A stretch of DNA of 64,000 bases from the IMG/VR virus record IMGVR_UViG_3300042514_000542, positions 62,001 to 126,000 of that record. One strand, 5' to 3'. The notes below the pieces were generated by a model. It did no database searches. It saw only the letters and a program-made list of their open reading frames with translations, and was not told the DNA's origin. This document shows, piece after piece, positions 1 to 48,646 of the stretch; position 1 is the stretch's first letter, and every line of letters starts with the position of its first letter. Made by a program: the position numbers and the translations under genes.

Positions 1-82
1 TTATCAGGTTTGAAGAGTGTATCGGTTTCAATTTCTGTAACGGTAACGTATGTTGCAGCCATACACAAATTATAGTTCGGTT

Positions 83-322
83 TTAATTAATCTCTTCCCA
101 CAAGTTTTCCAAAGCCTCAAGCATTTCACCTTCATTTCCCTTATAGTATTTCTCAAGATATGTAAAGAATCCCGTGAAACCATATTCCTTAAAAGTTTCC
201 CTAAGATTATTCTTATCCCTCCAACGTGTTCCAGACTTTATTTCCTCTAATACACATTTGAAAGCAGCATCCTTAAAGTCTTCCATAGCTTTAACTTCTT
301 CTGGAGATAATGTGATCTTCAT
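83..322 (-). CDS. hypothetical protein
   Basis: ORF starts 6 nt after the repeat at 329; its stop codon lies inside the repeat at 69. Confidence 0.7.
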   Translation of the reverse strand: MKITLSPEEVKAMEDFKDAAFKCVLEEIKSGTRWRDKNNLRETFKEYGFTGFFTYLEKYYKGNEGEMLEALENLWEEIN

Positions 323-513
323 AACAGTATTATAGTTCGGTTTAATTATCCCTGTTTCTAAGTTCTTCTAGAATTTCTTCTTGAAGCTGTATTTGACGTT
401 GTTGTGGCGTAATAACAATATCACGGGACACGACATAATATACTCCATAATATACTCCAATTGCTAATGCAATAGCAAATACAACAGCTACTAAAATTTC
501 AGATGATTTCATA

Positions 514-915
514 TTAGTCTAAGCTCCAATCAATTTCCTCTTCCAATTCACCCACACACTCTTCCGCCCATTGAGACTCTCGAAAATTCCTATAAGACAT
601 ACCAACCCATAAGGAAAGCATAGCCAATAGTGCCAGTTCCAAAGTCTTGTGTTTGGAATGTTCTACATAGTCTGTAGTGGGAGGTTCCAAATAAGAACCA
701 CTATCATACGCCTCATGTCCAACTTCAAACTCCGTGAAGTCTTCATTCGCCATGATAGTAATGCCATCAAAGTTCATACCCCAATATCCATCCATGTCTT
801 GATAGAACTCATTGGGGAATACACTAATCTTTTGCTTGAGATTACTCTCAACAAATTTTAGAAATACTTCCACTTCTTTATTAGCGAACTTAATCTGTCT
901 TTCTAGGTTATCCAT
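514..915 (-). CDS. hypothetical protein
   Basis: 133 aa ORF, ATG 6 nt after the repeat at 922. Confidence 0.7.
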   Translation of the reverse strand: MDNLERQIKFANKEVEVFLKFVESNLKQKISVFPNEFYQDMDGYWGMNFDGITIMANEDFTEFEVGHEAYDSGSYLEPPTTDYVEHSKHKTLELALLAMLSLWVGMSYRNFRESQWAEECVGELEEEIDWSLD

Positions 916-1376
916 GATAGTATTATAGTTCGGTTTTAATTATTGACAAATAACCAAATTCCCACAATTATACATAAAGCAGCCAACAATGAAATTAGTG
1001 ATAAAATAATTACCAACCAACCACATGTGATTATAATATCTATAATCACCAAAACTGGCAGAAAGATGAGAAACAATCCTAGATATTTTTTAAATATATT
1101 TGACATATTTCTATTAACTAACTTTTATATATTGTGCTATCACTATCAGAATACCAATAATAATCGCAGCTATTACCATATCATTCATATTAAAAATTTC
1201 CAAATTTTTCGTCAGAGGGAAAATCAGATTTGATTAGTTCCTGTATATCCTTCCTAAATTCATAATATTTGTCAAGAAGTTGACTCGCAACATTATCGGA
1301 AAAATATTCTGTATCGAATAATTCGTGAGCAACATTATCGAAGACACTTTCCAGTTCTTCGATAATGTTCTTTCTA

Positions 1377-1619
1377 TTAGCGTTCATATTTAAGAATTAG
1401 AGGATTGGTTGGTAAAACATTAGAAAACTTTGCGGGACGTTTATAGTAACCACGAATTTGTTCACCTTTTTTATTATAGAAATGATTAAGCCTTCCATTA
1501 GTGGATGCTACAATCATTTTATGAGTCTTCTTAGCCGATTCAAGCTTCCTATCAAAGTCCTTAATGAATAAGCTATAGAAGAATTGTTTAAATGTTCGTT
1601 TGTCTTTCTCGTCTTTCAT
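1377..1619 (-). CDS. hypothetical protein
   Basis: ATG 6 nt after the repeat at 1626. Confidence 0.65.
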   Translation of the reverse strand: MKDEKDKRTFKQFFYSLFIKDFDRKLESAKKTHKMIVASTNGRLNHFYNKKGEQIRGYYKRPAKFSNVLPTNPLILKYER

Positions 1620-1643
1620 ATTGCTATTGTAGTTCGGTTTTAA

Positions 1644-2045
1644 TTACGTAAATCCTACGGTTCCCATCAAACATTCTGGACGTTCAATGATCTTATATCC
1701 ATAATCGGACATATCATACTTAAACCAGACCTCATTACTATAATCCTCACCCCACTTAAGTCCATCAATACAATCTAAGTAATGGGTTTCGATCAGTAGG
1801 TATTCATAGTATCCTTCACAGATACCATACGGATCATTGGACTTCTTAACAGTCCCAATAAGTTCATCTTTGTCTAGGAATGATCCACGATACTTTCCAC
1901 CAGATTGCCAAGCATGATAAAGTTCTTTATCTTCTCTCCACTTATCCTTAGCAACACTATCACGATTTTTCTCGCATTCCCTATATACTTCCCAAGACTT
2001 AATCCAAGTTTCGGGAAATGCTATTAGATGGTGAATTTCTTTCAT
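1644..2045 (-). CDS. hypothetical protein
   Basis: Cassette bounded by the repeats at 2052 and 1626. Confidence 0.7.
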   Translation of the reverse strand: MKEIHHLIAFPETWIKSWEVYRECEKNRDSVAKDKWREDKELYHAWQSGGKYRGSFLDKDELIGTVKKSNDPYGICEGYYEYLLIETHYLDCIDGLKWGEDYSNEVWFKYDMSDYGYKIIERPECLMGTVGFT

Positions 2046-2069
2046 ATCAGTATGATATTTCGGTTTTAA

Positions 2070-2357
2070 TTAATCAAATTCAAACCCATAGATCACATAA
2101 TCATTCCCACATTTGATTTCAACTAATCCACCACGATACAAATCAGTATAGTTTTCGTGTAGTTCATCAAAACCTTCTCTTGTTGGAGAGATTGATATAA
2201 TGGTTCCTGATTCATAATAATCAGTCCGATACAATGAATCAACTGTTACGGTATAATCATTATAATTAGGATGGGACTTAGCTACTGATTGTAACTCTTT
2301 GATATGATCCCACCTAAGATTCTGTTTCTCTTGATACTCTTTGAGTTTCTTATTCAT
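2070..2357 (-). CDS. hypothetical protein
   Basis: Start overlaps the upstream stop; its own stop lies in the repeat at 2052. Confidence 0.65.
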   Translation of the reverse strand: MNKKLKEYQEKQNLRWDHIKELQSVAKSHPNYNDYTVTVDSLYRTDYYESGTIISISPTREGFDELHENYTDLYRGGLVEIKCGNDYVIYGFEFD

Positions 2358-3085: not shown

Positions 3086-4217
3086 AGCTAGATTATATTT
3101 CGGTTTTAATTAAGCCCTACAAACCGTAGAGGTAAAATTCTCTGTATCGAACTCAACAGTAATACTTTCACCATAAGTAACCCATGTAGATATAATATCC
3201 ATAATCTCTTCCTTCTTTTCATCAAAGTCGTCGGAAGTTGCAATATCTTCATAATCCAATGCGTCTTTTACAGCATATTCTACTGCATCCGGTGTCTTAA
3301 ATGATACTCTAATCTTCATACCCAAATTGTAGTTCGGTTTTAATTAAGCACCCTTCAGATAAAGAACACCATCATTATCTTCAATAACCATAAATGTTGG
3401 ATCATCGGAATCTTTAGTAGAACCAATCTTCATAAATTCGAAGTTATCAATAGGTATTGGAGTTGATGTAATAGTTGTATATATAATAGTGCCATCAGCA
3501 TCACACATATCCAAAAAATCCAGTAGATTTTTCCAAGTTGTTATATCTAGTTTGTTCATATTATTTTGATTTAAGAAAGAGACATAAAGGTTCAATAACA
3601 CATACTCCCATTTGAGTTGCTACATCCGCTTTATGAAAGAAAGTAGGTGCATCAAAGTCATTCTTATATACAAATGCCGTTGTCACTTCATCCAATCTAA
3701 CAAGAAATTGTGGATGTTCTTTTGTGATATTGTGATTAATTAAGATATCACATAGATGTTCGTATGCCTTATCAGAAGACTTAATTGGGCCTTGGAATAC
3801 AAACCCATGAGTTTCGCTATAATCCTTTTTTAATTCCACAATATCCATATTTCTGTAGGTAATCATATTGTAATTATATTCCGGTTTTAATTATTGTAAA
3901 TTAGGTTTAATATGTTTATTAGATTAAAAAGTTTATTAGAATTAACCAATTCTAGTAGCAGCCGCCTTAATAGATCCCATGGTGCGTCTATACTTACCAA
4001 GTGTATCAAATACTTTATCTTGTTCTTTGGTTAGAAGTTGTGCGATTTCTGTAGCACTTAAAGAAGGAGATCTTGTATGTGATTGAATGATACCACGAAG
4101 CTTAATCATAAGTTCGTGTGTTACAGCATCGCCATGATTTTGAAATAGTGTACCATCATCTGTCTTGTATACTTTTACTTGTTGCATATCTAATTATACT
4201 TCGGTTTTAATTAAAGG

Positions 4218-4414: not shown

Positions 4415-4416
4415 AT

Positions 4417-4878: not shown

Positions 4879-4902
4879 AGTTGTATTATAGTTCGGTTTT
4901 AA

Positions 4903-5556
4903 TTAATAACCCCATGCTTTAAGGGTATGTTGGAATGGTTGTGATTCAATTCCTTTAACCAATTCAAGCATTTTGGTGGCGATATCATTGATTTCTTTTT
5001 GTGCGTGTTCGGATTTTCTAAGTTTTAGAAAGTTTGCAAAGCTTCTCATGTTAAAGGAAACGTCTCCTTGAATTTGCGAGTTATACGTCTTAAAGAATCG
5101 TGCTGATTCCTTTGCCCTCTTACGTCCAAGAATAGGCTCTAGGTCTTTGAGGCATTGATGATAGAGTCTATTAGATTCAATAGAAAAATCGTTCAATCTT
5201 TCAAGCCAAGTCATGTTTGGTGTCTCCCCATGAATATGGGAAATCTCTACATCCCAATCTTCTGGAAGATAATACTTATCCTCTTTAAGTTCTTTATACC
5301 TAGCAGACTCCGCATTCATGCTAGAGATACGATGCTTAAGTAAATGAATGTGACTGGCAATATCTGTATCTACTAGGAAGTGAACCATTCCTTTTTCGAA
5401 TGGTGTCTCATGCCCATTCTCCCATAACATCTTAATCAAATTGGGAACACGATTCTTCTTATCTTCGGTTAGTTCTCTTGAAGTGCTAGTCCATGCTGAA
5501 CATGCTATAACTTCGTCTGATCCATAGAATCCGATTAGTTCTACTTTATTATCCAT
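4903..5556 (-). CDS. thyX: flavin-dependent thymidylate synthase
   Basis: GHETPFE, HLLKHRISSMNAESARY, NMRSFANFLKLR..HAQKEI. Confidence 0.9.
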   Translation of the reverse strand: MDNKVELIGFYGSDEVIACSAWTSTSRELTEDKKNRVPNLIKMLWENGHETPFEKGMVHFLVDTDIASHIHLLKHRISSMNAESARYKELKEDKYYLPEDWDVEISHIHGETPNMTWLERLNDFSIESNRLYHQCLKDLEPILGRKRAKESARFFKTYNSQIQGDVSFNMRSFANFLKLRKSEHAQKEINDIATKMLELVKGIESQPFQHTLKAWGY

Positions 5557-6568: not shown

Positions 6569-6659
6569 AGTTGAATTATAGTTCGGTTTTAATTAAGCAG
6601 ATTACGTTTTCGGTCTATGTTGAATACAGAGTTTATTATTTGCTGAGTGTAATCTTATC

Positions 6660-9724: not shown

Positions 9725-9774
9725 GCGATTGGCTTGAACTTTCTTTTGTTGAAGCTATTGTATTTCGGTTTTAA

Positions 9775-10281
9775 TTAATCTTTCAGAACTTGTAGTCTCC
9801 ATTTAGCCGTTGATCTACTAATCTGTCTCAATTCCTTTTGGTGTCTATGATGATCAATATCATTCTTAGCTTTATCGTTTAGAATTCTACGATTGGGGAT
9901 TTTAATATTATCATAATCATATTCACTTATAAATTGTGGAACATAAAAATAAGAATTTACTGTATCCATGGGTTTCTTAAATCTCCACCAACTTCCAAGT
10001 TGATAACACCAACATTGATATTTTTTCCAGTATTCATTTTTCTTAGATCGCAATCTAATACAAAACAATAGACCTTCACGTTTAGGAAAACCGGGATCAT
10101 CACATCTTTCAATATATCTTAATGGGCCATCATAATCTCTTCCTTCTTTAGCATAAGCTAACAATTCATAATCATAACACTCTTCGGGTGTCAATGGTTC
10201 TTCATCTTCTTCGATTGGGATCTGATGCATGATACTAGAGAAGTCAGCATACCAATCAAGTTCTTTAACTTTTAGTTTCAT
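9775..10281 (-). CDS. hypothetical protein
   Basis: 168 aa ORF whose stop lies in the repeat at 9757. Confidence 0.65.
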   Translation of the reverse strand: MKLKVKELDWYADFSSIMHQIPIEEDEEPLTPEECYDYELLAYAKEGRDYDGPLRYIERCDDPGFPKREGLLFCIRLRSKKNEYWKKYQCWCYQLGSWWRFKKPMDTVNSYFYVPQFISEYDYDNIKIPNRRILNDKAKNDIDHHRHQKELRQISRSTAKWRLQVLKD

Positions 10282-10599: not shown

Positions 10600-10630
10600 A
10601 TCGTTATTATAGTTCGGTTTTAATTATGGT

Positions 10631-11401: not shown

Positions 11402-12314
11402 AATTCCATTTATATCCTTTATGTGTTTGTCTTTTCCCTTTACAACAAGCTACGATAGCTGATGGATCAAATCCAGTCGATTTGATGCTATCCCATGTTT
11501 TAATATGGTTATCATTTAAATCCTTTTGTTCAACTCTTATCCTGTTGTTTACGGGTGTGAAATTTATATTATTATTCTTAAAGTAGTTTTTGATGCATTT
11601 TATAGGAACACCATATTTTTTGTAAAGCCTGTATATTGTATACTCTTCCGTTTTGAAATCTTTAACTATATCTAAATATTTTAAACTATGATCAATTGGT
11701 CCATCTTCATCAATTTTAGAATTTTTTAATTGTTTTATCTCCCACTTATGTTTGTATGATTCTACTGGACAGTCACCAATATAATTTAAAAAATGTTTAG
11801 CAAATATTCGTTTGATATATATTCTGTTATTGGTGAAGTTGATCCATGATTTCCATTCCTGTAATTGCCCATTTAGAAACTCTAAACTATCTTTATCGAA
11901 GGAATCTGTGCATAATTTAATATATCCATGACTCTTATCTAATGAACCATCACCAACATACCATAACAGAATTATAGTGTTTGTCAACTCTAAATCTTTC
12001 GGAACTATTTTAAGTCCTTCTGGATACCACACCATTCTAAGGTTGTAGAATGTTATGCTGCTCTTAGTTCTTATGCTATAATTTATATATGTCTTCTTTG
12101 TTCTCTTATCGTAAATTTCTCTTCTGATCGGACCATCTTTATATCTGGGAGATACCAAGTCTTTAAGTTGATTCCATACATACTCCACATGATCTAAATT
12201 ACTACTACCATACATGAAGCAAGAGCTTTTACCCTTTATAGATAAGCACCCATCACCTAATAAGCATCCTTGAATTACTTCTAATTCGTATTGTGTTAAA
12301 TTTATTACACTCAT
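11391..12314 (-). CDS. LAGLIDADG homing endonuclease with C-terminal NUMOD1-like tail
   Basis: IQGCLLGDGCL and WYVGDGS motifs; IVACCKGKRQTHKGYKW tail; start reassigned to ATG 12314, after ACTAAATAATAGT. Confidence 0.85.
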   Translation of the reverse strand: MSVINLTQYELEVIQGCLLGDGCLSIKGKSSCFMYGSSNLDHVEYVWNQLKDLVSPRYKDGPIRREIYDKRTKKTYINYSIRTKSSITFYNLRMVWYPEGLKIVPKDLELTNTIILLWYVGDGSLDKSHGYIKLCTDSFDKDSLEFLNGQLQEWKSWINFTNNRIYIKRIFAKHFLNYIGDCPVESYKHKWEIKQLKNSKIDEDGPIDHSLKYLDIVKDFKTEEYTIYRLYKKYGVPIKCIKNYFKNNNINFTPVNNRIRVEQKDLNDNHIKTWDSIKSTGFDPSAIVACCKGKRQTHKGYKWNYEK

Positions 12315-12425
12315 ACTATTATTTAGTGTAGAGTGTAACACTTTTCACATTTGGACATAAGAAAGTTCCAGATATAAGAACGGGTCTGGACTCCGCATGA
12401 AAAAGACTCTTACTGTCTATGTGAA

Positions 12426-13017: not shown

Positions 13018-13059
13018 AATTTTGTCTTTCGTTGTAATGCTATTGTATTTCGGTTTTAA

Positions 13060-13362
13060 TTAACTCTTTTCGAACTTAGCTTTCAATGCTTCATATTGTC
13101 TTTTCTCAAATTCAAACTGTCTTTGATTATACTCTACCTCTTGTTTAAGACGAAGTGCTTCTTCCTCGTCGGTTTCAAGCTTATCACCATATAGAGTGTG
13201 TCTATAATAAGACCCATCTTCACAACTGTAATCGTAATCGAGTTTCAAATTGGTGTATTCATCAGAATAATAACCAAACTCTTGTGTCAAGCTATCAATG
13301 ACTTCATAAAGGGTTCCTGAAAAATGTAGTGTTGTAAGAGTATGTGTCTTTATCTTTTTCAT
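13060..13362 (-). CDS. hypothetical protein
   Basis: Cassette bounded by the repeats at 13369 and 13042. Confidence 0.65.
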   Translation of the reverse strand: MKKIKTHTLTTLHFSGTLYEVIDSLTQEFGYYSDEYTNLKLDYDYSCEDGSYYRHTLYGDKLETDEEEALRLKQEVEYNQRQFEFEKRQYEALKAKFEKS

Positions 13363-13391
13363 AACGTTATTGTATTTCGGTTTTAATTATG

Positions 13392-32878: not shown

Positions 32879-33526
32879 TTAATTCTTTGTTGTTAAAGGT
32901 GTCAGTCCACTCAATCCTGTTACAGTGTCTATTAAAAACACTTCACCATTTCTGGGATTTTTATATCTCTCGAAATCCTTTACAGACCATCCCAAGAGAT
33001 ACATTAAATAAAGCTTGTTAAACTCTCCGTGAGCTACCACAATATTGTGTTCATACTTACTAGTAGCTAGAATATGTTGATGGAACAATACTGCGCGTTG
33101 GTAACAGTCGGCAAACGACTCACCACCAGAAGGACGGTAATAGAAATTGAAATGTGATTCTGTTTTATTTCCCATTTCAACAATATCCCTAAGATTACCC
33201 CATTCTCTTTCACGTATCAGGGGCAATTCTTCAAATTTATTAATTTGATAGTTTTGATAACCCGTGATCCTACCATGTAGGATATTTGCTGTTTGGTATG
33301 CCCTCTTATAAGAACTATGATATAAATTAAAATTACATCTGGGTTCTCTAGGTGGATTGTCTGATTTAGCGTCATGTTCAACCAAACTCATAATATCATC
33401 AGCCGCATTAATAGCATCATCCTTTCCTCGTTCAGCCAATTCAATATCACAATCTAGATTTCTAAAATATTCAGATTTATCGATATTCCCCTTCGACAAT
33501 CCGTGTCTAACTAAGTAAATTTTCAT
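32879..33526 (-). CDS. histidine phosphatase (phosphoglycerate mutase family)
   Basis: LVRHG.S.GN, IREREWG, GGES, VVAHG. Confidence 0.85.
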   Translation of the reverse strand: MKIYLVRHGLSKGNIDKSEYFRNLDCDIELAERGKDDAINAADDIMSLVEHDAKSDNPPREPRCNFNLYHSSYKRAYQTANILHGRITGYQNYQINKFEELPLIREREWGNLRDIVEMGNKTESHFNFYYRPSGGESFADCYQRAVLFHQHILATSKYEHNIVVAHGEFNKLYLMYLLGWSVKDFERYKNPRNGEVFLIDTVTGLSGLTPLTTKN

Positions 33527-35419: not shown

Positions 35420-35443
35420 GTTGTGATTATACTTCGGTTTTAA

Positions 35444-36859: not shown

Positions 36860-36866
36860 AGTGTGA

Positions 36867-37169
36867 TTATACTTCGGTTTTAATTAAGTCCTTCTTCAGT
36901 TCACCAAATGTTTTCGATCTATTATGGTAGCCATATTCAATAATTTCTGATAGATATTTATCATCTTCAAATCGGGCAACTGGTGAACCAGAAAACATCC
37001 AAGATACACTACCACACCATTCAAATTCTGGAAATCCATTATGTCTACCATATTGAACCATAACACAACCACAGGGGTCGTTATCAAGACATTCTCTCAT
37101 ATCAACATTTCTATCATCGGGTTGTGATTCAATCCAATCGTGAAATTCTTTAATTTTTACTCTTTTCAT
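36867..37169 (-). CDS. hypothetical protein, paralog of 10294-10599
   Basis: WIESQPDDRNVDM..CGC; C-terminus LIKTEV is the translated promoter repeat. Confidence 0.6.
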   Translation of the reverse strand: MKRVKIKEFHDWIESQPDDRNVDMRECLDNDPCGCVMVQYGRHNGFPEFEWCGSVSWMFSGSPVARFEDDKYLSEIIEYGYHNRSKTFGELKKDLIKTEV

Positions 37170-38266: not shown

Positions 38267-39146
38267 ATTTATTTAAAATCTCCTCAACTCGTTCTTTATT
38301 AATCTCATCATCCCAAATAGTCTCAAAGTTATAATTTAAATTGATTATGTGGTCTTCTTTTATTTTATCTCTTTGCCATATTTGTTCCGCTGTTAACTTT
38401 CCATGGATTGTATTGAACATATCATGTGGTTTATAATATTTTGGATTTGCGTGCCAAAAGCACCCGTTAACCTCAATCACCAATTTTTTATTAGGTATGT
38501 ATATATCAACAATTGGGCAAAACCTTCTCTCCATAATTGGATTGTAAGATTTAAAGTATTCATTTGTTTCGGTTTCATATTCTACTCCCAAATCGTCTAA
38601 AATCTGCAATGTATCTCTATGCGGTTTAGATAATCTAAATGTCTTTCGAAAAAATCCCGGAATCTCCGATGGATGCTCGACACCATGATTAGTTATCCAG
38701 TAATCTTTAATTTTTTGTTTAATTACAGGAGATTTAAAATTATTATCTACTCCATATGTGTCTAAACATTTTAATCTCTTTTGTTCCTTTACTATATTTG
38801 ACTGGGATATATTTGTTATATTCTCACCATATTTCTCTCTTATAGTTTTAATTTTACTGGCACTAACACTTGGAAGGAAACATGTATCGGAAATGTTTCT
38901 AGTTTCAACTCCTGTTTCATTTCGTAATCTATCTATAATAACACCAGCACCACCTATAGATATTCCAATTTCTTGGAAATACTTGACTATAGAGTTTGCA
39001 CTCATATGTTCATTAAGATATAAATCAATTAATAAATCATTTGTTATTATTTCTCTAATATATTTTCTTCTATCGTGATTATTTGGGTGTTTCGACAATA
39101 CATCTCTATCCAATATCAAGCTTTCAAATTTTTCCTTTTCAGTCAT
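38253..39146 (-). CDS. free-standing Vsr/DUF559-like (EDxHD-type) homing endonuclease
   Basis: N-terminal repeats (YGVDNNFKSP, HGVEHPSE); C-terminal VDIYIP..VIEVNGCFWH..RD.IK..ETIW; preceded by CTAAATAATATAG-ATG. Confidence 0.8.
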   Translation of the reverse strand: MTEKEKFESLILDRDVLSKHPNNHDRRKYIREIITNDLLIDLYLNEHMSANSIVKYFQEIGISIGGAGVIIDRLRNETGVETRNISDTCFLPSVSASKIKTIREKYGENITNISQSNIVKEQKRLKCLDTYGVDNNFKSPVIKQKIKDYWITNHGVEHPSEIPGFFRKTFRLSKPHRDTLQILDDLGVEYETETNEYFKSYNPIMERRFCPIVDIYIPNKKLVIEVNGCFWHANPKYYKPHDMFNTIHGKLTAEQIWQRDKIKEDHIINLNYNFETIWDDEINKERVEEILNKYENC

Positions 39147-39185
39147 CTATATTATTTAGTCAAAACTGGATGGTTTCAACCAAAA

Positions 39186-39875: not shown

Positions 39876-39882
39876 GTGATGA

Positions 39883-40326
39883 TTATAGTTCGGTTTTAAT
39901 TAATTCGGGATTTTCGTAGATATTTCCAATAATTTCATATTTTTTAAAATCCTTGGATGTGTGGTTAAAGGCTCTACCGACTACTTCTGACTTAGATTCT
40001 CCGATCCTTCTATATATGTAAGGTGAATTAAAACTACCATCATAAAAGTCCACAACCATAAGAAATCTCAAATCTATTCCTTGCATCTGATGAAAGTTTT
40101 TAGATATAGTTTCTAAGATATCTCCCTCATAAATCTCTTTACCGTTTTTATCTTTAAATCCAGTGAATTGCATAACCTTAGAATACTTCAACCAATCATT
40201 GAAATCCCACACATCACCACCCCGACCACTCATTGAGTTATGTTCTACATGATGTTTTTCAATACCATGATGCATTTTATCATTATACCACGCTCTAAAT
40301 TTAATTTCTCTATTCATATCATTCAA
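39883..40326 (-). CDS. YopX family protein
   Basis: REIKFRAW, MQFTG.KDKNGKEIYEGDI, IIGNIYENPEL. Confidence 0.85.
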   Translation of the reverse strand: MNDMNREIKFRAWYNDKMHHGIEKHHVEHNSMSGRGGDVWDFNDWLKYSKVMQFTGFKDKNGKEIYEGDILETISKNFHQMQGIDLRFLMVVDFYDGSFNSPYIYRRIGESKSEVVGRAFNHTSKDFKKYEIIGNIYENPELIKTEL

Positions 40327-41086: not shown

Positions 41087-41856
41087 ATATATTTTTCTGT
41101 TTTAATAAATGACTCTGTATGAGTTTCGTTCAAGATTTTATACTTCATATCTGGATAATGTAGTTCCATATATAAGTCTAACTCATCTTCATTTAAAGCG
41201 CATACAAAAAACTTCTTTTCATCAATACCAACCTCATACATATTATGTAGAATGGTATCGTAATAGATGACTTTGTAAACTCTACCATAACCGACACGAA
41301 TAGCGTATTCAGCAAATAAGAAAAACACACAGATGACCATCCACCAATTAGTATCAGTTCCGAATATCCAACCAACACCACCAAACTTACACATTAAGAG
41401 CAATCCGATAATTGACATGATCCAGCCCCACCAATCAAATGGTTTAAATAATCTACCTACTTCTTTTGGTGTGTTCATTTGGTTCCTAATTTTTGTTTAA
41501 TCGCTTCTTCAAGTTTATCTATGACTTTGGTCAATTCCGGTGTCTTTCCAATATTTTCCTTTTTATATAGTTTGAAATATCTCTCCCTCAAAGAGACTAA
41601 TACTTCATCTACAGGTTCGGGTTCTACTTTCTTTTTTCGTTTAGCAGCCATTATACCCAATCCTCCTTTTTACCATATGCATAAAAATGATTAGTGTTGT
41701 TTCTAATTGAGCCTTCTGCATGACCATCCCAATAACACGTATTTGATAGTTCTTCCATCTTCTCACGAATAGAGTTTAACTCTTCTGCGCCATACCCCCA
41801 CTCATCTTTCAGTTCCTTTAGTAGTGTCGTAATCATAGTCATAGTATAGTTCGGTT

Positions 41857-42441
41857 TTAATTAATACCAAGTGCATTGAGCATCTGAATCTTCAATTTTT
41901 CAAAATCATCTTTTTGATATCCCATTTTCTCTTTCCATACTTCAAACTCATTAACTCTTACGAATTGTTCTTTTGGTAGATTGTTTAGGAATGCGGCTTT
42001 ACCATATTGTTCTCTGGAATGTTCACAATACGGTAGATTATCAACCAATATGTTATGAGTGTTGACGAACTTGGGATTTACTTCTATGGATAAAATATCT
42101 TCTCTCGAAAAAATATTCGAATTTGGATCAAACCCCAATTCAAGTTTCTTATTACACCATCTTATGTAGTCCCCTACTGATGCTGTTAGAATATAGACAT
42201 TATCATGCCCTACCAATTCTCTGGAAAATTTGATAAGATCATCCGTCCACGATCTTTTACAGGTAACATACCATTCTATTTCACCATGAACATCCCAACC
42301 CTTGGGATTCACGTAAAACTTCTCACATCTCCAATGTTCACCATACATGTCAATCAATTGATCAGCATGTTTCTCATGGTCGGCGTATAAGCTGTGGGCA
42401 AGGCATTCGTCGTAATCGAGCATAATAACTCTTTTTTTCAT
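41857..42441 (-). CDS. HAD-superfamily phosphatase
   Basis: LDYDECL, ILTAS, LVDN. Confidence 0.65.
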   Translation of the reverse strand: MKKRVIMLDYDECLAHSLYADHEKHADQLIDMYGEHWRCEKFYVNPKGWDVHGEIEWYVTCKRSWTDDLIKFSRELVGHDNVYILTASVGDYIRWCNKKLELGFDPNSNIFSREDILSIEVNPKFVNTHNILVDNLPYCEHSREQYGKAAFLNNLPKEQFVRVNEFEVWKEKMGYQKDDFEKLKIQMLNALGIN

Positions 42442-42482
42442 ATTTTTTGTAGATTATGGTGTGTGATAGGTTAAATATATTT

Positions 42483-43469
42483 ATGCGAAAGTCAAAAATT
42501 AGTTTAGCAGATGAAGAAGCGATTGTCAATCAGTATTTAAAGGAAAAAAATGTAGAAAAATTAAGATCTAAATATAAAACATCATTTAAAGATATTAAAA
42601 ATATTCTAATTAAAAATAATATATATTCAGGTAGAAGATCAACTTCATTGAATTTAAAATATTTTGAAAATATAGATAGTAATGAAAAAGCTTATTGGTT
42701 AGGATTTATTTCGGCTGATGGATCTTTGTCTAAAAATGGGTATAAATTATCCTTTGGTGTTAAGGATTCTGATATATTAGAAAAATTTAAAAGAGCCATA
42801 TCATCTGGAAGCCCTGTATCAGATTTCAACGTATATGATGAGAGGACAGATAAAACTTACAATAGATATAGTCTTCAGATATGTTCTAAAGAATTTTGCC
42901 AATATATAAGAAATCATGGAGTTGATGAAAACAAGTCAAAAGTATTCAAATTCCCAAAGATTGATGAGAAATATTACTCCCATTTTATTAGAGGGTTATA
43001 TGACGGTGATGGTAGTATATGTATAGTCAAATCCAAGGTTATAGAGAATATCAACTTTAGGGCAAATATTATAAGTTCTTTGGAGTGTGTTAACTACATT
43101 AAAGTTTATTTAGAAAGCATCAATATCTCATCTAATAAAATATTTTCCAAACACGACCAAAATATTCACTATATTACATTTGGAAAGGACGTTATTAAAT
43201 TTTTAAATTGGATTTATAAAGACTCATCCGAAGAAACTAGGTTGGATAGAAAATACAATAAATTTATCGATAATCTACATGATTATAATACCCAACATAA
43301 GATTTTTCAAATTAAAAATCATCAAACCGGAGTTACACATAAAGTTAAGAATTTGATTAAATTCTGTAAAGATAATAATTTAAACGATAATTACTTGAGG
43401 TATAATATGACTAATGGAAAAATTCCAACAAAAGGTAAGCACTTAGGATGGGAATTATTACCCAATTAA
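42483..43469 (+). CDS. LAGLIDADG homing endonuclease, antisense orientation
   Basis: AYWLGFISADG and HFIRGLYDGDG; start reassigned to ATG 42483, after TAAATATATTT. Confidence 0.85.
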   Translation: MRKSKISLADEEAIVNQYLKEKNVEKLRSKYKTSFKDIKNILIKNNIYSGRRSTSLNLKYFENIDSNEKAYWLGFISADGSLSKNGYKLSFGVKDSDILEKFKRAISSGSPVSDFNVYDERTDKTYNRYSLQICSKEFCQYIRNHGVDENKSKVFKFPKIDEKYYSHFIRGLYDGDGSICIVKSKVIENINFRANIISSLECVNYIKVYLESINISSNKIFSKHDQNIHYITFGKDVIKFLNWIYKDSSEETRLDRKYNKFIDNLHDYNTQHKIFQIKNHQTGVTHKVKNLIKFCKDNNLNDNYLRYNMTNGKIPTKGKHLGWELLPN

Positions 43470-45860: not shown

Positions 45861-46073
45861 GGAGCTAGTGTATTTCGGTTTTAATTAACATTATTAATGT
45901 GCCAGTAGCTTATTTCTGCATGGAAGTCCTTCTCAGTCTTTATCGACCCCTCCTTTACGTATATAAATGATTCAGGTCGTTCATTATCATACCCCCAAAT
46001 CTCGATCATATTATCATCCACCATCTGGAAACTGTATGACCCAATCACTCCTTCGTATATCGCTTCTTTCATT

Positions 46074-46952
46074 TTATAGTCTTGTTAATACGTTTTTTAC
46101 TAACGATTTAAATTTATATGTCATTTTGTTATTTGGGAATTGCTTCCAGTATTGTATCACAACTGCGAAGAATTCATCTGAGTTCAACAACCCATATTCC
46201 GGGAAACCCAATTTTTTAGACATGTTAGACCTGATGGTTGGGGTTATTGTCTTACCCTTACCTTTTTTCATGGCTTTATAATACATGTCAATCATATCTT
46301 GATATGCGTGTTTCAATAAAACCTCTGTCTGTCTTGGTATCTGGTCTGCTACGTGATGGGCATATTCGTGGATGTAAATATCATGGTCATCCATTTGTTT
46401 TGAATTTATAAAAATCGAATCACTAAAATAAAGTCCCCTATCCCTTTTATCACTATGTTTTTTAGTGTCGGGATTTCTTAATAAATCGGTAATTATAAAT
46501 GTTGGTCTTCTATTGGGTAGTAAATCTTTTATATAGATCATAAATTTTCTAATCACACTATTTAAAATTCTATAATTATATGAATTTTTAGAAAAATCAC
46601 CATCAACAGTATTAGTGTCTATTAGAACTTTCACACCCATATATTCCAAAACTTGAGTGTAATGGGTTTTAGATGGTTTTTTTAAACCATTTAAATATTT
46701 ATCAAACTCATTATTCAAAAAGATTGAAGCCTTTTCTGGGTAGATCTCTAATAGATTATCATAACTACTTCGGATAATTTTATCATTTTCATCATCGAAA
46801 TCATCCACATCACTATCAGTAATATAATCAATCCAATTCTGTTTAAATTGTGGAGTGTTAAAATCGACATTTCCAATGTATGATAGTTCCCTCTTCCTTA
46901 GAGGGTTTCTCTGTTTTCTCTCATAAAACAATTTAAATGGCATCATCAATAT
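46074..46952 (-). CDS. HExxH metallopeptidase-like protein, probably late/virion
   Basis: IHEYAHH, then EFFA; TAAATATATTG-ATG late-type start near 46949. Confidence 0.5.
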   Translation of the reverse strand: MLMMPFKLFYERKQRNPLRKRELSYIGNVDFNTPQFKQNWIDYITDSDVDDFDDENDKIIRSSYDNLLEIYPEKASIFLNNEFDKYLNGLKKPSKTHYTQVLEYMGVKVLIDTNTVDGDFSKNSYNYRILNSVIRKFMIYIKDLLPNRRPTFIITDLLRNPDTKKHSDKRDRGLYFSDSIFINSKQMDDHDIYIHEYAHHVADQIPRQTEVLLKHAYQDMIDMYYKAMKKGKGKTITPTIRSNMSKKLGFPEYGLLNSDEFFAVVIQYWKQFPNNKMTYKFKSLVKNVLTRL

Positions 46953-46954
46953 AT

Positions 46955-47548
46955 TTATCGATTTTTCCAAGATTTATAGTGATCATCGCAGAGAGATTTA
47001 TACCAGTTCTCCGTTCGAAGAACTCCTACATCACCACATTTTTCACAAGTTGTAGTGGATTTTCCTAGAATTTCATCAAGTTTTCGATACTCCTCATAAT
47101 ATAATTTATAATCCTCACCATAGAAATCACCTTGATCACGTAATTCTCCGAATTTCTCTTTGAAAATACAAGTCTTATAGTGAACATCATGACCTTTAGA
47201 TTTAGCATCATCTAGTAACTTCTTCATTTCCGTGAAATATTCACGGATGATTTCTTTCCAGCCAATACCACATTCAAAACCATATCGAAGATTTGTTAGG
47301 TCTTCTTTTTTCATATTCACTTCTGGGCAAAAGTTATGGTATCTATCATACCATTCTTCTACATATGGTGATAACTCCAAAGTGAATTCGGGAAACTCAT
47401 TAACAAGATCCCACCATTCCTCACTTATATTACTTTTTACAAATTCCATACTTTCGATTATTTTTCCACCAGATTCAATTATAAATCTGATTGGACAGTA
47501 TTTCTTCTTCCCTAGCTTTCTTAAGCTTATAATGGGTCGATTCTTCAT
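46955..47548 (-). CDS. hypothetical protein (C-terminal CxxC..C..H)
   Basis: KEKFGELR and TCEKCG..LCDDH; ATG 6 nt after the repeat at 47555. Confidence 0.6.
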   Translation of the reverse strand: MKNRPIISLRKLGKKKYCPIRFIIESGGKIIESMEFVKSNISEEWWDLVNEFPEFTLELSPYVEEWYDRYHNFCPEVNMKKEDLTNLRYGFECGIGWKEIIREYFTEMKKLLDDAKSKGHDVHYKTCIFKEKFGELRDQGDFYGEDYKLYYEEYRKLDEILGKSTTTCEKCGDVGVLRTENWYKSLCDDHYKSWKNR

Positions 47549-47572
47549 GCACCCACTATACTTCGGTTTTAA

Positions 47573-48646
47573 TTAAGCCTTTATCGTGCAACCAAGTGTA
47601 GAGATGTTCGCCTTACCATTGGATATAAGAACTTGTTCTACAGAGAAAAGATCCTTATCCTCACCGACACTTACGATGTTGAAACCTTGTTGCCAATTCA
47701 TTCCCGAACCGTATGCAGCGTCCAATGAACATAAACAACCACCTTCGAATCCATAATACTGTTTCTCTGGACGACCACCAATAGATGGAACTCTTTGGCA
47801 TGATGATCCAATTCTATGAGTGTGACCATGTAGAATGGATGTGTGCCACTTATCAAGTTCACCCCTAGCAGACGCACCCCCATTTTTTCGAACCGTTTCA
47901 CCATGAGTTACAATAAGACCATTAAGATCTACGTAATCGACATGTTCGACCTTATCCTTAAATTCTCCCATGAATACATTTTCATATGAGAGAATATCAG
48001 TAATGTTTGATAAACTTCCAAGCTCTCCAAGTCTATCTGACAGATATCGTCTCCATCTACCACTAACAGATTGTCCCGAATGGTTACTAACCGTTTCGTA
48101 AATCTTAGCACCACCAGAAACACCAATCAACTCATGTAGGAAAGCATGATATGCTTCTCTCTCTGATTGAAGCGACCAACTATTCTTAAGATCTTTTGGA
48201 TATTTTGAAATAGCCAAGAAGTCCATTGTGTCGCCATTTAGAATGATGGTCTTTGGCTTTAATTGAAATATTGTTTCAAGAAAAATATCAATCGCCTTCT
48301 TATCCTCACAACCGAAGTGGAAATCGGAACCAACAACGGCATAATCATTAAGCGTTATTTTTGACGAGTTTTCGTATTTGGGTTCAATCTTAATCGGTGC
48401 TAATTGTGATAGGAACTCAAGAACCTCATCTTCATTCCTTTGAAACCTTTTAGGTTTATCTCTTTGGAGATTATCATTGATATACGGGACGACATCAGGA
48501 ACTCCTGTTCCGTCAACCCCAAAATCTTCGATATATGCTCTATACCAATCTGCTGCTGTTGACTTGGCAACACCAAACTCTTCTTTAATTTGGCTATACG
48601 TATAACCGTTTTGCCTCGCTGAAATTACCTGTTGTTTTACATTCAT
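47573..48646 (-). CDS. metallophosphoesterase with N-terminal HTH
   Basis: YTYSQIKEEFGVAKSTAADW helix-turn-helix; SDFH, NGD..DF, THG, GHTHR. Confidence 0.8.
   Translation of the reverse strand: MNVKQQVISARQNGYTYSQIKEEFGVAKSTAADWYRAYIEDFGVDGTGVPDVVPYINDNLQRDKPKRFQRNEDEVLEFLSQLAPIKIEPKYENSSKITLNDYAVVGSDFHFGCEDKKAIDIFLETIFQLKPKTIILNGDTMDFLAISKYPKDLKNSWSLQSEREAYHAFLHELIGVSGGAKIYETVSNHSGQSVSGRWRRYLSDRLGELGSLSNITDILSYENVFMGEFKDKVEHVDYVDLNGLIVTHGETVRKNGGASARGELDKWHTSILHGHTHRIGSSCQRVPSIGGRPEKQYYGFEGGCLCSLDAAYGSGMNWQQGFNIVSVGEDKDLFSVEQVLISNGKANISTLGCTIKA

What the first reader, a model, noticed from the sequence alone, without database searches (positions are those of the whole stretch)
69..47575. 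35 copies of a non-canonical promoter driving leaderless mRNAs
The repeat has a -10 hexamer but replaces the -35 with a fixed TAATTAAAACCGAA block directly upstream. 26 of 35 copies put the ATG exactly 6 nt after the hexamer, where transcription would start, leaving no room for a Shine-Dalgarno site. It is absent from the structural region. Inference: a middle-promoter class read by a phage sigma factor or activator, in a host that translates leaderless mRNA efficiently, which is also a clue to host identity.
Basis: partly seen in the sequence, partly recalled or inferred. Interest (0 to 1): 0.6.

Follow-up and report, generated by a model that had tools for sequence, protein, structure and literature searches.

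The report
Phage promoter repeat driving leaderless genes
A lake-water relative of phage T4 places the same 21-base promoter, which has no -35 box, in front of dozens of early-type genes so that transcription should start on the ATG itself; its late and standard promoters are laid out the same way, so the phage appears to do without ribosome-binding sites.

Summary
The window has 35 co-oriented minus-strand copies of TAATTAAAACCGAA-N-TAyAAT (33 exact blocks; about 2 expected by chance). In 25 of them, not 26, the ATG lies exactly 6 nt after the hexamer. None lies in the structural region.

The 206.6-kb genome is a distant T4-like myovirus from lake metagenomes and carries 66 copies. Relatives with only about 55-70% protein identity keep the core TAATTAAAACCG unchanged.

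It is a promoter, not a translation signal:
- Copies precede tRNA genes.
- A subset carries TTGACA at correct -35 spacing.
- The hexamer varies like a sigma70 -10 element.
- The base before the ATG is always a pyrimidine.

Leaderless geometry is not special to this motif. T4-type late promoters (TAAATA-N5/6-ATG, 55 sites) and canonical TTGACA/TGn promoters show it too. No Shine-Dalgarno enrichment exists anywhere.

What reads the 12-bp block at -27 to -16 is unknown. No MotA, AsiA or phage RNA polymerase was found. A second gp55-like sigma exists but is absent from a complete relative with the same motif.

My best reading is a functional analogue of T4 middle promoters that also acts as a cassette boundary like the PeSL elements. 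Timing, start sites and host remain untested.

The parts
69..89 (-). B-class promoter copy (block 76-89, hexamer TATAAT 69-74); ATG 6 nt downstream at 60-62; ORF runs off the window start (107 aa in the genome)
922..942 (-). B-class promoter, TATAAT, N6-ATG, ORF 514-915 (133 aa)
1626..1646 (-). B-class promoter, TACAAT, N6-ATG, ORF 1377-1619 (80 aa)
   Evidence: Contigs of other lake runs stop matching at 1646/1647
2052..2072 (-). B-class promoter, TATCAT, N6-ATG, ORF 1644-2045 (133 aa)
3092..3112 (-). B-class promoter, TATAAT, N6-ATG, ORF 2354-3085 (243 aa, phrog_1617)
3326..3346 (-). B-class promoter, TACAAT, N6-ATG, ORF 3110-3319 (69 aa)
   Evidence: Loose contig ends at 3347
3873..3893 (-). 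B-class promoter, block variant CCGGA (1 mismatch), TATAAT, N6-ATG, ORF 3561-3866 (101 aa)
4193..4213 (-). B-class promoter, TATAAT, ATG 5 nt downstream, ORF 3942-4187 (81 aa)
4885..4905 (-). B-class promoter, TATAAT, N6-ATG, ORF 4417-4878 (153 aa)
6575..6595 (-). B-class promoter, TATAAT, N6-ATG, ORF 6023-6568 (181 aa)
9757..9777 (-). B-class promoter, TACAAT, no adjacent ATG; about 90-nt leader before ORF 8008-9666 (552 aa, DUF7788)
10606..10626 (-). B-class promoter, TATAAT, N6-ATG, ORF 10294-10599 (101 aa)
13042..13062 (-). B-class promoter, TACAAT, 24-nt leader, ORF 12667-13017 (116 aa)
13369..13389 (-). B-class promoter, TACAAT, N6-ATG, ORF 13060-13362 (100 aa)
15411..15431 (-). B-class promoter, TACAAT, no adjacent ATG; lies upstream of the NAPRTase-like gene, which has its own late promoter
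16582..16602 (-). B-class promoter, TATAAT, ATG 9 nt downstream, ORF 16132-16572 (146 aa)
17549..17569 (-). B-class promoter, TACAAT, N6-ATG, ORF 16622-17542 (306 aa); a hairpin lies directly upstream
18693..18713 (-). B-class promoter, TACATT, 50-nt leader, ORF 17629-18642 (337 aa)
18933..18953 (-). B-class promoter, TACAAT, N6-ATG, ORF 18717-18926 (69 aa)
21353..21373 (-). B-class promoter, TATACT, ATG 7 nt downstream, ORF 19417-21345 (642 aa, GHKL ATPase-like)
21464..21484 (-). B-class promoter, TACAAT, ATG 9 nt downstream opening only a mini-ORF; 111 nt upstream of the next copy
22378..22398 (-). B-class promoter, TATAAT, N6-ATG, ORF 21883-22371 (162 aa)
23042..23062 (-). B-class promoter, TACAAT, N6-ATG, ORF 22379-23035 (218 aa)
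26241..26261 (-). B-class promoter, TATAAT, N6-ATG, ORF 25791-26234 (147 aa)
28267..28287 (-). B-class promoter, TACAAT, ATG 7 nt downstream, ORF 27024-28259 (411 aa, PARP catalytic + WGR domains)
29802..29822 (-). B-class promoter, TATACT, N6-ATG, ORF 29616-29795 (59 aa), followed by the Rnl1-type RNA ligase gene 28537-29619
32124..32144 (-). B-class promoter, TACACT, N6-ATG, ORF 31680-32117 (145 aa)
32861..32881 (-). B-class promoter, TATAAT, N6-ATG, ORF 32138-32854 (238 aa)
35426..35446 (-). B-class promoter, TATAAT, N6-ATG, ORF 34739-35419 (226 aa)
36866..36886 (-). B-class promoter, TATAAT, N6-ATG, ORF 35444-36859 (471 aa, RNA ligase)
39882..39902 (-). B-class promoter, TATAAT, N6-ATG, ORF 39186-39875 (229 aa)
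41088..41108 (-). Degenerate copy (TTATTAAAACAGAA, 2 mismatches, no good hexamer); probably decayed
41843..41863 (-). B-class promoter, TATACT, in-frame ATGs at 0 and 6 nt, ORF 41651-41842
45867..45887 (-). B-class promoter, TACACT, N6-ATG, ORF 44943-45860 (305 aa)
47555..47575 (-). B-class promoter, TATAGT, N6-ATG, ORF 46955-47548 (197 aa); last copy before the structural region
12312..12325 (-). T4-type late promoter TAAATA-N5-ATG, ORF 11391-12314
15291..15304 (-). Late promoter TAAATA-N5-ATG, NAPRTase-like ORF 13794-15293
15336..15349 (+). Late promoter TAAATA-N5-ATG, ORF 15347-16135
24174..24187 (-). Late promoter TAAATA-N5-ATG, ORF 23394-24176
39144..39158 (-). Late promoter TAAATA-N6-ATG, ORF 38253-39146
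42472..42485 (+). Late promoter TAAATA-N5-ATG, ORF 42483-43469
46944..46957 (-). Late promoter TAAATA-N5-ATG, ORF 46074-46946
49854..49868 (-). Late promoter TAAATA-N6-ATG, ORF 48882-49856
50091..50104 (+). Late promoter TAAATA-N5-ATG, ORF 50102-50572
54111..54124 (-). Late promoter TAAATA-N5-ATG, ORF 53226-54113
56766..56779 (-). Late promoter TAAATA-N5-ATG, ORF 56046-56768
58725..58738 (-). Late promoter TAAATA-N5-ATG, ORF 58161-58727
61058..61071 (-). Late promoter TAAATA-N5-ATG, tail sheath gene 58751-61060
61691..61704 (-). Late promoter TAAATA-N5-ATG, ORF 61112-61693
62431..62445 (-). Late promoter TAAATA-N6-ATG, ORF 61702-62433
24692..24719 (-). Canonical sigma70-type promoter (TTGACA-N13-TGnTAnnnT), ATG 4 nt after the hexamer
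25414..25441 (-). Canonical sigma70-type promoter (TTGACA-N13-TGnTAnnnT), 35 nt before ORF 24716-25378 (phosphoesterase)

Best explanation
The repeat is a phage-specific promoter class without a -35 box, which I call class B.

Layout, counted from the predicted start:
- An invariant 12-bp core TAATTAAAACCG sits at -27 to -16.
- Three looser bases follow (GAA/AAn in this genome).
- A sigma70-type -10 hexamer TAyAAT sits at -12 to -7.
- Six free bases end in a pyrimidine.
- The A of the ATG is +1, so the mRNA has no leader.

Inferred mechanism. The host core polymerase with its primary sigma melts the -10 element. The block replaces the -35 contact and is read by a sequence-specific protein that is most likely phage-encoded and not yet identified. 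This would be a functional analogue of the MotA box/MotA-AsiA system of T4 middle promoters, not a homolog of it.

Transcripts then run through several small genes, because there are no terminators. Downstream genes are translated by coupling.

The element closes all three reading frames (TAA at offsets 0, 4 and 17) and supplies the next gene's start. It therefore also serves as a universal cassette boundary at which related phages have swapped genes, as at PeSL elements.

Shown: the anatomy, the conservation, the promoter-like signatures, the absence of known readers and the cassette breakpoints.
Inferred: the start site, the polymerase and sigma used, the existence of an adaptor protein, and the timing.
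For: Evidence that it is a promoter and not a translation signal:
- Copies precede tRNA genes. TTGACAT+block+hexamer lies before tRNA-Glu, a tRNA with anticodon CTA and tRNA-Asp. The tRNA-Asp 5' end is the 6th base after the hexamer.
- 5 of 66 copies have TTGAC(A/T) giving a 16-nt spacer to the hexamer.
- Hexamer positions 1, 2, 4 and 6 are near-invariant while positions 3 and 5 vary.
- The base before the ATG is a pyrimidine in 25 of 25 window copies and 124 of 141 copies in relatives, never G.
- Every copy is co-oriented with its gene.

Selection on the block:
- At 15 orthologous sites in a relative with mean 69% protein identity, the block is 98% identical and the hexamer 84%. N6 is 57%, codons 2-15 are 60% and the upstream 43 nt are 34%.
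- 141 copies occur in IMG/VR relatives that are 70-75% identical in nucleotides.
- In a relative at about 55% protein identity the 12-bp core persists while the next 3 nt vary; 20 of 29 copies have N6-ATG.

Evidence that the block needs its own reader:
- The phage also has canonical TTGACA-N13/14-TGnTAnnnT promoters, 17 observed against 0.5 expected. This implies the host holoenzyme uses -35 and TGn, both of which class B lacks.
- The 21-mer is at chance level in 185,579 bacterial species genomes, with 4 single hits.
- A generic sigma70 scan does not pick the copies out: 85 found against 79 expected.

Leaderless geometry is general:
- TAAATA-N5/6-ATG occurs at 55 sites and a gp55 ortholog is present.
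- T4 late promoters span -13 to -6 (PMC2988020).
- There is no SD enrichment: 7% against 6.7% background.
- 61% of promoter-less genes start within -20 to +10 nt of the upstream stop.
- 96% of starts are ATG.

Cassette role:
- Upstream stop codons fall inside the element in 36 of about 51 cases.
- 22 of 77 homology breakpoints lie within 40 nt of a copy, against 5.7 +/- 2.3 expected.
- Contigs from other lakes diverge exactly at the block edge.
Against: - No transcript data exist. No RNA run holds the sequence, so start sites, activity and timing are untested.
- No candidate block-binding protein was found. MotA_activ, MotCF and AsiA models give nothing.
- About 45 conserved proteins scanned with PHROGs or Pfam show no DNA-binding or sigma domain. 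Most of the roughly 300 ORFs were not scanned.
- The genes behind class B resemble T4 immediate-early genes as much as middle genes, which would fit recognition by unaided host polymerase.
- The breakpoint enrichment is partly confounded, because the copies sit at gene boundaries.
Confidence: 0.5

Rival explanations
1. Class B is the immediate-early class and is read by unmodified host sigma70 holoenzyme. The block is an intrinsic spacer or proximal element that the phage has optimised. Its copies are kept identical by selection for strength and by recombination among copies, as with the very strong T4 early promoters and PeSLs.
For: - Gene content is early-like: a Dda-like helicase, RNA ligases, kinase/phosphatase genes and many small orphan ORFs.
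- No phage factor was found.
- T4 early promoters also show consensus beyond the standard elements (PMC2988021).
- PeSL promoters are near-identical repeats (PMC4122927).
Against: - Class B lacks both -35 and TGn, while the same phage uses perfect TTGACA plus TGn elsewhere.
- The block is conserved more strictly (98%) than the -10 hexamer (84%), which is unusual for spacer contacts.
- The motif is absent from bacterial genomes beyond chance.
Confidence: 0.22
2. A phage-encoded alternative sigma reads the whole 21-bp element on host core polymerase, as gp55 reads TATAAATA. Candidates are the gp55 paralog at genome 24657-25001 or an unrecognised sigma.
For: - The genome encodes two gp55-like proteins. 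The paralog scores E 1.3e-12 against phrog_234, is 37% identical to the ortholog, and matches T4 gp55 in PDB 7D7C at E 2e-4.
- gp55-type sigmas need no -35 element.
- The paralog sits in the tRNA cluster behind a TTGACA+block promoter.
Against: - The paralog is absent from the complete relative G001 (56 motif copies), from G003, and from the fragment G004, which covers the orthologous tRNA region.
- The hexamer has the sigma70 pattern T-12 A-11 ... T-7, not the gp55 pattern.
- The Sigma70_r2 model finds only the gp55 ortholog.
Confidence: 0.08
3. A phage-encoded RNA polymerase reads the 21-bp element as its own promoter, as in T7, N4 or crAss-like phages. It would be either packaged in the virion or made early.
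For: - Near-identity of many copies is typical of phage-polymerase promoters.
- The element starts with TAAT and ends with TATA-like bases, as T7-group promoters do (from my own knowledge).
- Five large late proteins (650-890 aa) have no family match.
Against: - The T7-type RNA_pol model gives no match (the control was uninformative).
- No DxDGD-type catalytic motif occurs in any large ORF.
- The phage is T4-like with a gp55 late system, which uses host core polymerase.
- The TTGACA subset and the -10-like variation fit sigma70.
Confidence: 0.05
4. The element acts at the RNA level, either as a processing site that cuts polycistronic RNA just before each AUG or as a translation enhancer that replaces Shine-Dalgarno pairing. 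It would not be a promoter.
For: - The distance to the ATG is fixed.
- There is no SD anywhere.
- There are no terminators between genes: 6 found against 9.2 expected.
Against: - Copies precede tRNA genes.
- The TTGACA subset has correct spacing.
- The late genes use a different element, TAAATA, which is the known gp55 promoter, at the matching distance.
- The block has no self-complementarity.
- The Y-1/R+1 rule is a property of transcription starts.
Confidence: 0.05

Closest known systems
T4 middle promoters (MotA box plus sigma70 -10; MotA/AsiA sigma appropriation)
   Same: A host-type -10 element is combined with a phage-specific upstream element that replaces the -35 box. There are about 60 copies per genome, in front of prereplicative genes and tRNAs, in a T4-type phage (PMC2988021).
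   Different: - The element differs in sequence: TAATTAAAACCG against (a/t)(a/t)TGCTT(t/c)a.
- It lies 3 bp from the -10 element (at -27 to -16) instead of 12 +/- 1 bp (centred at -30).
- It is near-invariant, whereas MotA boxes are degenerate.
- No MotA or AsiA homolog is present.
- Transcripts are leaderless.
PeSL/PmSL composite promoter elements of T4-like hyperplastic regions (Arbiol 2010; Comeau 2014)
   Same: Near-identical promoter repeats sit between small variable ORFs, are concentrated outside the structural modules, and coincide with indel and replacement breakpoints between related phages (PMC4122927).
   Different: - There is no stem-loop terminator.
- There is no -35 box.
- There is no Shine-Dalgarno site.
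- The element itself carries the upstream stop codon in all three frames and abuts the next ATG.
-10-adjacent leaderless genes of Deinococcus-Thermus, and the -35-less leaderless middle/late promoters of Thermus phages phiYS40 and P23-45
   Same: A -10 TANNNT motif lies at a fixed short distance from the ORF and gives leaderless mRNA (PMC12340547). In the Thermus phages, phage promoters without a -35 box drive leaderless transcripts (my own knowledge of Sevostyanova 2007 and Berdygulova 2011; those papers are not held).
   Different: - Those hosts and phages still use GGAG sites for leadered genes; here SD is at background level.
- This is a different phage lineage, T4-like and from fresh water.
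- The extra 12-bp block has no counterpart there.
T4 late promoters read by gp55
   Same: The phage's second leaderless class, TAAATA at -11 to -6, matches the T4 late core, and a gp55 ortholog lies next to the gp47 and gp46 genes (PMC2988020).
   Different: - The repeat under study does not match this consensus.
- In T4, cyanophage S-T4 and pelagiphage HTVC008M the TAAATA-to-ATG distance is scattered and SD sites are used.

Membership tests
T4 middle (MotA-dependent) promoters | sigma70-type -10 element TAtaaT at -12 to -7 and no -35 element | tested here: met
   The hexamer is TAyAAT with T1, A2, A4 and T6 near-invariant. There is no conserved -35 box except TTGAC in 5 of 66 copies.
T4 middle (MotA-dependent) promoters | MotA box (a/t)(a/t)TGCTT(t/c)a centred at -30, 12 +/- 1 bp from the -10 element | tested here: not met
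   The block is TAATTAAAACCG(AA), 1-3 bp from the hexamer, and contains no TGCTT (definition from PMC2988021).
T4 middle (MotA-dependent) promoters | motA and asiA genes in the phage | tested here: not met
   PF09114, PF09158 and PF09010 give no six-frame match at E <= 10. Very remote homologs cannot be excluded.
PeSL/PmSL elements | Conserved promoter repeats between small ORFs in variable regions, associated with indel breakpoints between related phages | tested here: met
   There are 66 copies in the variable half of the genome. 22 of 77 breakpoints lie within 40 nt of a copy, against 5.7 expected. Upstream flanks at orthologous sites are unrelated (34% identity). Contigs from other lakes diverge at the block edge.
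PeSL/PmSL elements | Stem-loop terminator just upstream of the promoter, and a Shine-Dalgarno site before the start codon | tested here: not met
   Terminator-like sites number 6 against 9.2 expected. The upstream stop codon lies inside the element. No class B gene has an SD tetramer (0 of 42).
gp55-dependent T4-type late promoters | TATAAATA-type element at -13 to -6 with no upstream element | tested here: not met
   The hexamer register and bases differ (T-12 A-11 y A A T-7), and a conserved upstream block is present. The separate TAAATA class of this phage does meet the feature.
Leaderless-mRNA promoters (-10 motif adjacent to ORF) | -10 motif at a fixed distance such that +1 falls on the start codon | tested here: met
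   N6-ATG occurs in 39 of 66 genome copies, 46 of 56 copies in G001 and 99 of 141 copies in relatives' loci, with a pyrimidine at -1.
Leaderless-mRNA promoters (-10 motif adjacent to ORF) | Primary transcript 5' end mapped to the start codon | not testable with these tools
   No RNA run holds the sequence. The runs that were laid are DNA contigs.
Single-subunit or non-canonical phage RNA polymerase promoters | A phage-encoded RNA polymerase gene | tested here: inconclusive
   PF00940 gives no match, but the control was uninformative. There is no polymerase PHROG among the large ORFs scanned. No DxDGD-type motif occurs in any large ORF. Five large late ORFs remain without annotation.

The most novel reading that the evidence does not exclude
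A lineage of T4-like freshwater jumbo phages runs its whole expression programme without ribosome-binding sites. Three promoter classes would each start transcription on the start codon, and in one case on the mature 5' end of a tRNA. The largest class would be switched on by a new sigma-appropriation-type adaptor, unrelated to MotA/AsiA, that reads a 12-bp box in the promoter spacer at -27 to -16. The same box would serve as a three-frame stop and as a recombination joint for plug-and-play gene cassettes.
Probability: 0.3. Interest if true: 0.8.

Novelty: new variant of a known kind. Interest (0 to 1): 0.6.

Why it matters
If the start sites are confirmed, this would be, to my knowledge, the first T4-type phage in which early-type, canonical and gp55-dependent late promoters are all placed to give leaderless mRNAs. 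No Shine-Dalgarno sites are used anywhere.

That makes three things testable:
- How a virus can rely on 70S-type initiation and translational coupling alone.
- Which abundant lake bacterium supports such translation.
- What protein reads an invariant box placed in the promoter spacer, a position for which no phage adaptor is known.

The element is also a very compact, self-contained unit for gene expression and cassette exchange: stop codon, promoter and start within 30 bp. This is of interest for understanding how hyperplastic regions of large phages evolve.

Tried and rejected
Rejected as the general reader because it is absent from the complete relative G001 and from G003 and G004, although those carry the motif.
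- MotA_activ, MotCF, AsiA, Sigma70_r2 and T7-type RNA_pol models on the whole genome. Only gp55 was found.
- Catalytic DxDGD-type motif grep. Nothing relevant.
- Host markers WhiB, psbA-type Photo_RC and ribosomal protein S21. None present.
- Motif scan of 185,579 species genomes. Four single hits at chance level, giving no host lead.
- Megablast of 20 kb against GenBank phages. No match. Protein searches give only 30-42% identity to cyanophages, a pelagiphage and others.
- The 76-aa protein at genome 25821-26051 (97% identical in G001, behind a TTGACA+block promoter), considered as a candidate factor. It is an orphan: no PHROG, Pfam or Atlas match and only two clusters in 5.8 billion proteins. 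It was not detected in the incomplete G002. It remains speculation only.
- PHROG or Pfam scans of about 45 conserved proteins. These found enzymes (RNA repair, nucleotide metabolism, glycosyltransferases) but no DNA-binding domain.
- RNA evidence. No RNA run holds the stretch.
- Joints reported by read laying at motif copies have sides of only 22-31 letters. I treat them as repeat artefacts, not rearrangements.
- G005, an unrelated 30-kb virus record with one exact hit. Single copy, treated as chance.
- 'relatives' search.
- Sevostyanova 2007 (PMC1885378). Not held.
- Scanning the whole proteome through one large alignment. Not attempted, to avoid an oversized call.
- TAG recoding, prompted by the tRNA with anticodon CTA. 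TAG is the rarest stop (16 of 270), but coding density under the standard code is 94%, so I see no sign of recoding.

Full report
**What the window is.** The window is bases 62,001-126,000 of a single 206,590-bp virus record. CheckV rates the record as complete. It has 35% G+C and comes from lake-water metagenomes: 16 DNA runs hold all or part of it and no RNA run does.

It is a distant member of the T4 superfamily. It encodes:
- a gp17-type terminase and a tail sheath;
- a gp43-type DNA polymerase, gp41-like helicase, UvsX, gp46/gp47, and a gp55 late sigma at genome 177897-178343;
- UvsY and a UvsW-like helicase;
- a Dda-like helicase.

The closest GenBank phages are only 30-42% identical in terminase and sheath. 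Megablast finds nothing.

**The observation.** On the minus strand, TAATTAAAACCGAA occurs 35 times between 76 and 47575: 33 exact, one with 1 mismatch and one degenerate. About 2 hits are expected by chance. Each good copy is followed by one free base, a hexamer (mostly TATAAT or TACAAT), six free bases and, in 25 of 35 copies, ATG. No copy lies in the structural part of the window.

Genome-wide there are 66 copies with at most one mismatch, always pointing the same way as the gene behind them. Of these, 39 have the ATG exactly 6 nt after the hexamer.

**Why it is a promoter and not a translation signal.** Four independent signatures point to transcription.

1. Copies stand before tRNA genes. 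The genome has 23 tRNA genes. TTGACAT+block+hexamer units lie 12, 14 and 5 nt before tRNA-Glu, a tRNA with anticodon CTA and tRNA-Asp. The mature 5' end of tRNA-Asp is the 6th base after the hexamer.
2. Five of the 66 copies carry TTGAC(A/T) immediately 5' of the block, giving a 16-nt spacer to the hexamer. This is a canonical -35/-10 arrangement with the block as the spacer. Relatives have such hybrids too.
3. The hexamer varies as a sigma70 -10 element does. T1, A2, A4 and T6 are almost fixed, while positions 3 and 5 are free.
4. The base before the ATG is T or C in 25 of 25 window copies and in 124 of 141 copies in relatives, and is never G. That is the pyrimidine(-1)/purine(+1) preference of bacterial transcription starts (established knowledge). 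With the hexamer at -12 to -7, the A of the ATG is base +1.

A transcribed translation enhancer would not be needed before tRNAs. It would also not be replaced by a different element in late genes.

**Conservation.** The 21-mer pattern was found in 30 stretches of IMG/VR contigs from eight metagenome data sets. Those stretches align to this genome at only 68-85% nucleotide identity over part of their length. Yet they hold 141 copies, 99 of them with N6-ATG.

A complete relative, G001 (211,724 bp, with terminal repeats), has 56 copies, 46 with N6-ATG. It shares 178 of my roughly 303 ORFs at 26-97% protein identity. At 15 orthologous promoter sites the identities are:

| Segment | Identity |
|---|---|
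| Block | 98% |
| Hexamer | 84% |
| N6 | 57% |
| Codons 2-15 | 60% |
| 43 nt upstream | 34% (unrelated) |

A more distant relative, G002 (about 55% protein identity), keeps TAATTAAAACCG, but the next three bases vary. It has 29 copies, 20 with N6-ATG. The functional core is therefore 12 bp at -27 to -16, at a fixed 3-bp distance from the -10 element.

In other lake runs no substitution is listed inside a block copy (40 of 77 substitution rows were shown); one low-depth X2 contig has a 1-base insertion behind 3880, inside the variant copy 3873-3893.

**The wider picture: three promoter classes, all leaderless.** Genes without the repeat show a second element. TAAATA is followed after 5 nt (44 sites) or 6 nt (11 sites) by the ATG of a long ORF. 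This is the core of the T4 late promoter, which spans -13 to -6 (PMC2988020). With 5 nt after it, +1 again falls on the A of the ATG. G001 and G002 show the same peak. T4, cyanophage S-T4, pelagiphage HTVC008M and a Flavobacterium phage do not.

A third class is canonical: TTGACA-N13/14-TGnTAnnnT, with 17 sites against 0.5 expected. It lies before the DNA polymerase gene and other replication-region genes (UvsY, the UvsW-like helicase and a thymidylate-kinase-like gene sit behind looser TTGAC promoters). It probably also drives the operon that holds gp55. In 10 of the 17 sites the ATG lies 4-12 nt after the hexamer, so the leaders are 0-5 nt long.

Promoter-less genes show no Shine-Dalgarno signal. 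SD-like tetramers occur before 7% of them, against 6.7% before random ATGs. On the same measure, long ORFs in 50-kb stretches score as follows:

| Genome | Long ORFs with an SD-like tetramer upstream |
|---|---|
| T4 | 46% |
| HTVC008M | 42% |
| S-T4 | 23% |
| Flavobacterium phage | 4% |
| This phage | 8% |

Sixty-one percent of promoter-less genes start within -20 to +10 nt of the upstream stop, including 31 ATGA overlaps. ATG is the start codon in 96% of genes. The leaderless layout is therefore a property of the whole phage and hence of its host's translation. It is not a property of the repeat.

**Who reads the block.** The phage uses perfect -35 and TGn elements elsewhere, which implies its host polymerase needs them. 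Class B has neither. A generic sigma70 scan does not enrich for the copies: 85 found against 79 expected. The 21-mer is at chance level in 185,579 bacterial species genomes, so it is not a host promoter type. The block is conserved more strictly than the -10 element. Together these facts point to a dedicated sequence-specific reader.

- There are no MotA, MotCF or AsiA matches.
- There is no sigma70-family protein other than gp55.
- There is no T7-type polymerase.
- There is no two-barrel catalytic motif.
- There is no DNA-binding domain in about 45 conserved proteins scanned.

A second gp55-like gene (genome 24657-25001, 114 aa) looked promising. It is 37% identical to the ortholog and matches T4 gp55 in PDB 7D7C. 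However, it is missing from G001, G003 and G004, which carry the motif. It cannot be the general reader.

The best-supported model is therefore by analogy. T4 middle promoters combine a host -10 element with a phage box that replaces the -35 box. They number about 60 and serve prereplicative genes and tRNAs (PMC2988021). Here the box differs in sequence, is much closer to the -10 element and is near-invariant, and the proteins are not homologous. Whether the class is early or middle cannot be told from sequence. The genes behind it include a Dda-like helicase, two RNA ligases, kinase and phosphatase genes, a PARP-like protein, tRNAs and many small orphan ORFs. These fit either class.

**Second role: cassette boundary.** TAATTAA gives TAA in two frames, and TATAAT gives it in the third. 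The stop codon of the upstream gene lies inside the element in 36 of about 51 cases, at offsets 0, 4 and 17. The commonest intergenic gaps are 24 and 20 nt. Intrinsic terminators are not enriched.

Several results tie the copies to gene exchange:
- Between this genome and G001, 22 of 77 homology breakpoints in the region lie within 40 nt of a copy. Random placement gives 5.7 +/- 2.3, with a maximum of 14 in 1000 trials. Gene boundaries are a partial confounder.
- Upstream flanks at orthologous promoters are unrelated.
- In three other lake runs, contigs stop matching exactly at the 5' edge of a block (window 1646/1647, 2072/2074, 3346/3347) and continue with unlike sequence.

This is the behaviour described for PeSL/PmSL promoter elements of T4-like hyperplastic regions (PMC4122927). 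Here there is no stem-loop, no -35 box and no SD site.

**Host.** The host is unresolved. The habitat is fresh water. The lack of SD sites resembles a Bacteroidota phage. However, the canonical -35/TGn promoters and the lack of enrichment for TAnnTTTG argue against that phylum; this is an inference from the known Bacteroidota promoter consensus. The lack of SD on leadered genes argues against Actinobacteria and Deinococcus-Thermus, and no WhiB gene is present. There is no psbA and no S21 gene.

**Verdict.** The promoter and leaderless reading is well supported by indirect evidence. The 'middle class read by a phage sigma or activator' part is plausible but unproven, and the one sigma candidate fails a conservation test. 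This is a new variant of known kinds: T4 middle-type promoters, PeSL elements and -10-adjacent leaderless genes. It sits in a phage whose whole expression layout is unusual.

Noticed in passing
L032:4657-5001 (+) = genome 24657-25001: A second, short gp55-like sigma gene (114 aa) lies inside the tRNA cluster. It is 37% identical to the phage's own gp55 ortholog and scores E 1.3e-12 against phrog_234. It is absent from the close complete relative G001.
   Followed up: yes
L032:3941-4013 (+) = genome 23941-24013: A tRNA with anticodon CTA (amber suppressor; ARAGORN labels it Pyl) lies behind a TTGACAT+block promoter and is conserved in relatives. TAG is the rarest stop codon (16 of 270), but I saw no sign of recoding. 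One gene pair (window 33530-33985 and 32879-33526) is in frame across a TAG.
   Followed up: partly
L032:1625-1696 (+) = genome 21625-21696: One of four tRNA-Met(CAT) genes looks like an initiator tRNA. Its 5' end reads CGCGG with base 1 unpaired, its anticodon loop is CTCATAA, and its 3' end reads GCAAC. A phage-borne initiator tRNA would fit a leaderless lifestyle.
   Followed up: partly
L032:8688-8788 (+) = genome 28688-28788: At tRNA-Asp the predicted transcription start coincides, within 1 nt, with the mature 5' end. The tRNA may be made without a 5' leader.
   Followed up: partly
L032:1437-1470 and L032:3906-3941 (+): At two tRNA promoters the 3' part of the block (CCGGA or CCGA) is repeated in inverted form just after the hexamer (TCCGG or TCGG), so the -10 element sits in the loop of a short palindrome. 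The same is seen in relative L026. It may be an operator.
   Followed up: no
L032:1317-1365 (+) = genome 21317-21365: A block copy with hexamer TATAAA is followed at once by a GC-rich hairpin and a T run. This could be a tiny RNA or an attenuated promoter.
   Followed up: no
genome 48226-48665 (-) = L033:8226-8665: Four copies of a variant element, TAATTAAAACAGAA-T-GAGAAT/GAGACT, lie at the far end of the array. A run of copies with hexamer TAGAAT lies at 48.8-53.6 kb. These are possible sub-classes.
   Followed up: no
window 10631-11401, 27024-29619, 31262-31675, 32879-33526, 35444-36859 (-); L032:18158-19660 (-): There is a large RNA and tRNA repair and maintenance set: a Thg1-like tRNA-His guanylyltransferase, Rnl1- and Rnl2-type RNA ligases, an AAA_33 kinase, a histidine phosphatase and a CCA-adding enzyme, alongside the 23 tRNA genes. 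A PARP-like protein (PARP catalytic + WGR + regulatory domains) lies among them.
   Followed up: partly
L038:6644-13364 = genome 186644-193364: An island of eight glycosyltransferase and FkbM-methyltransferase genes that is absent from G001.
   Followed up: partly
L032:5821-6051 (+) = genome 25821-26051: A 76-aa orphan protein is 97% identical in G001, where the shared-protein mean is about 65%. It has no family, Atlas or structure lead. It lies behind a TTGACAT+block promoter.
   Followed up: partly
L037:18340-19077 (-) = genome 178340-179077: A GIY-YIG-type homing endonuclease gene is inserted just upstream of the gp55 gene. Its best match in G001 lies at another locus.
   Followed up: no
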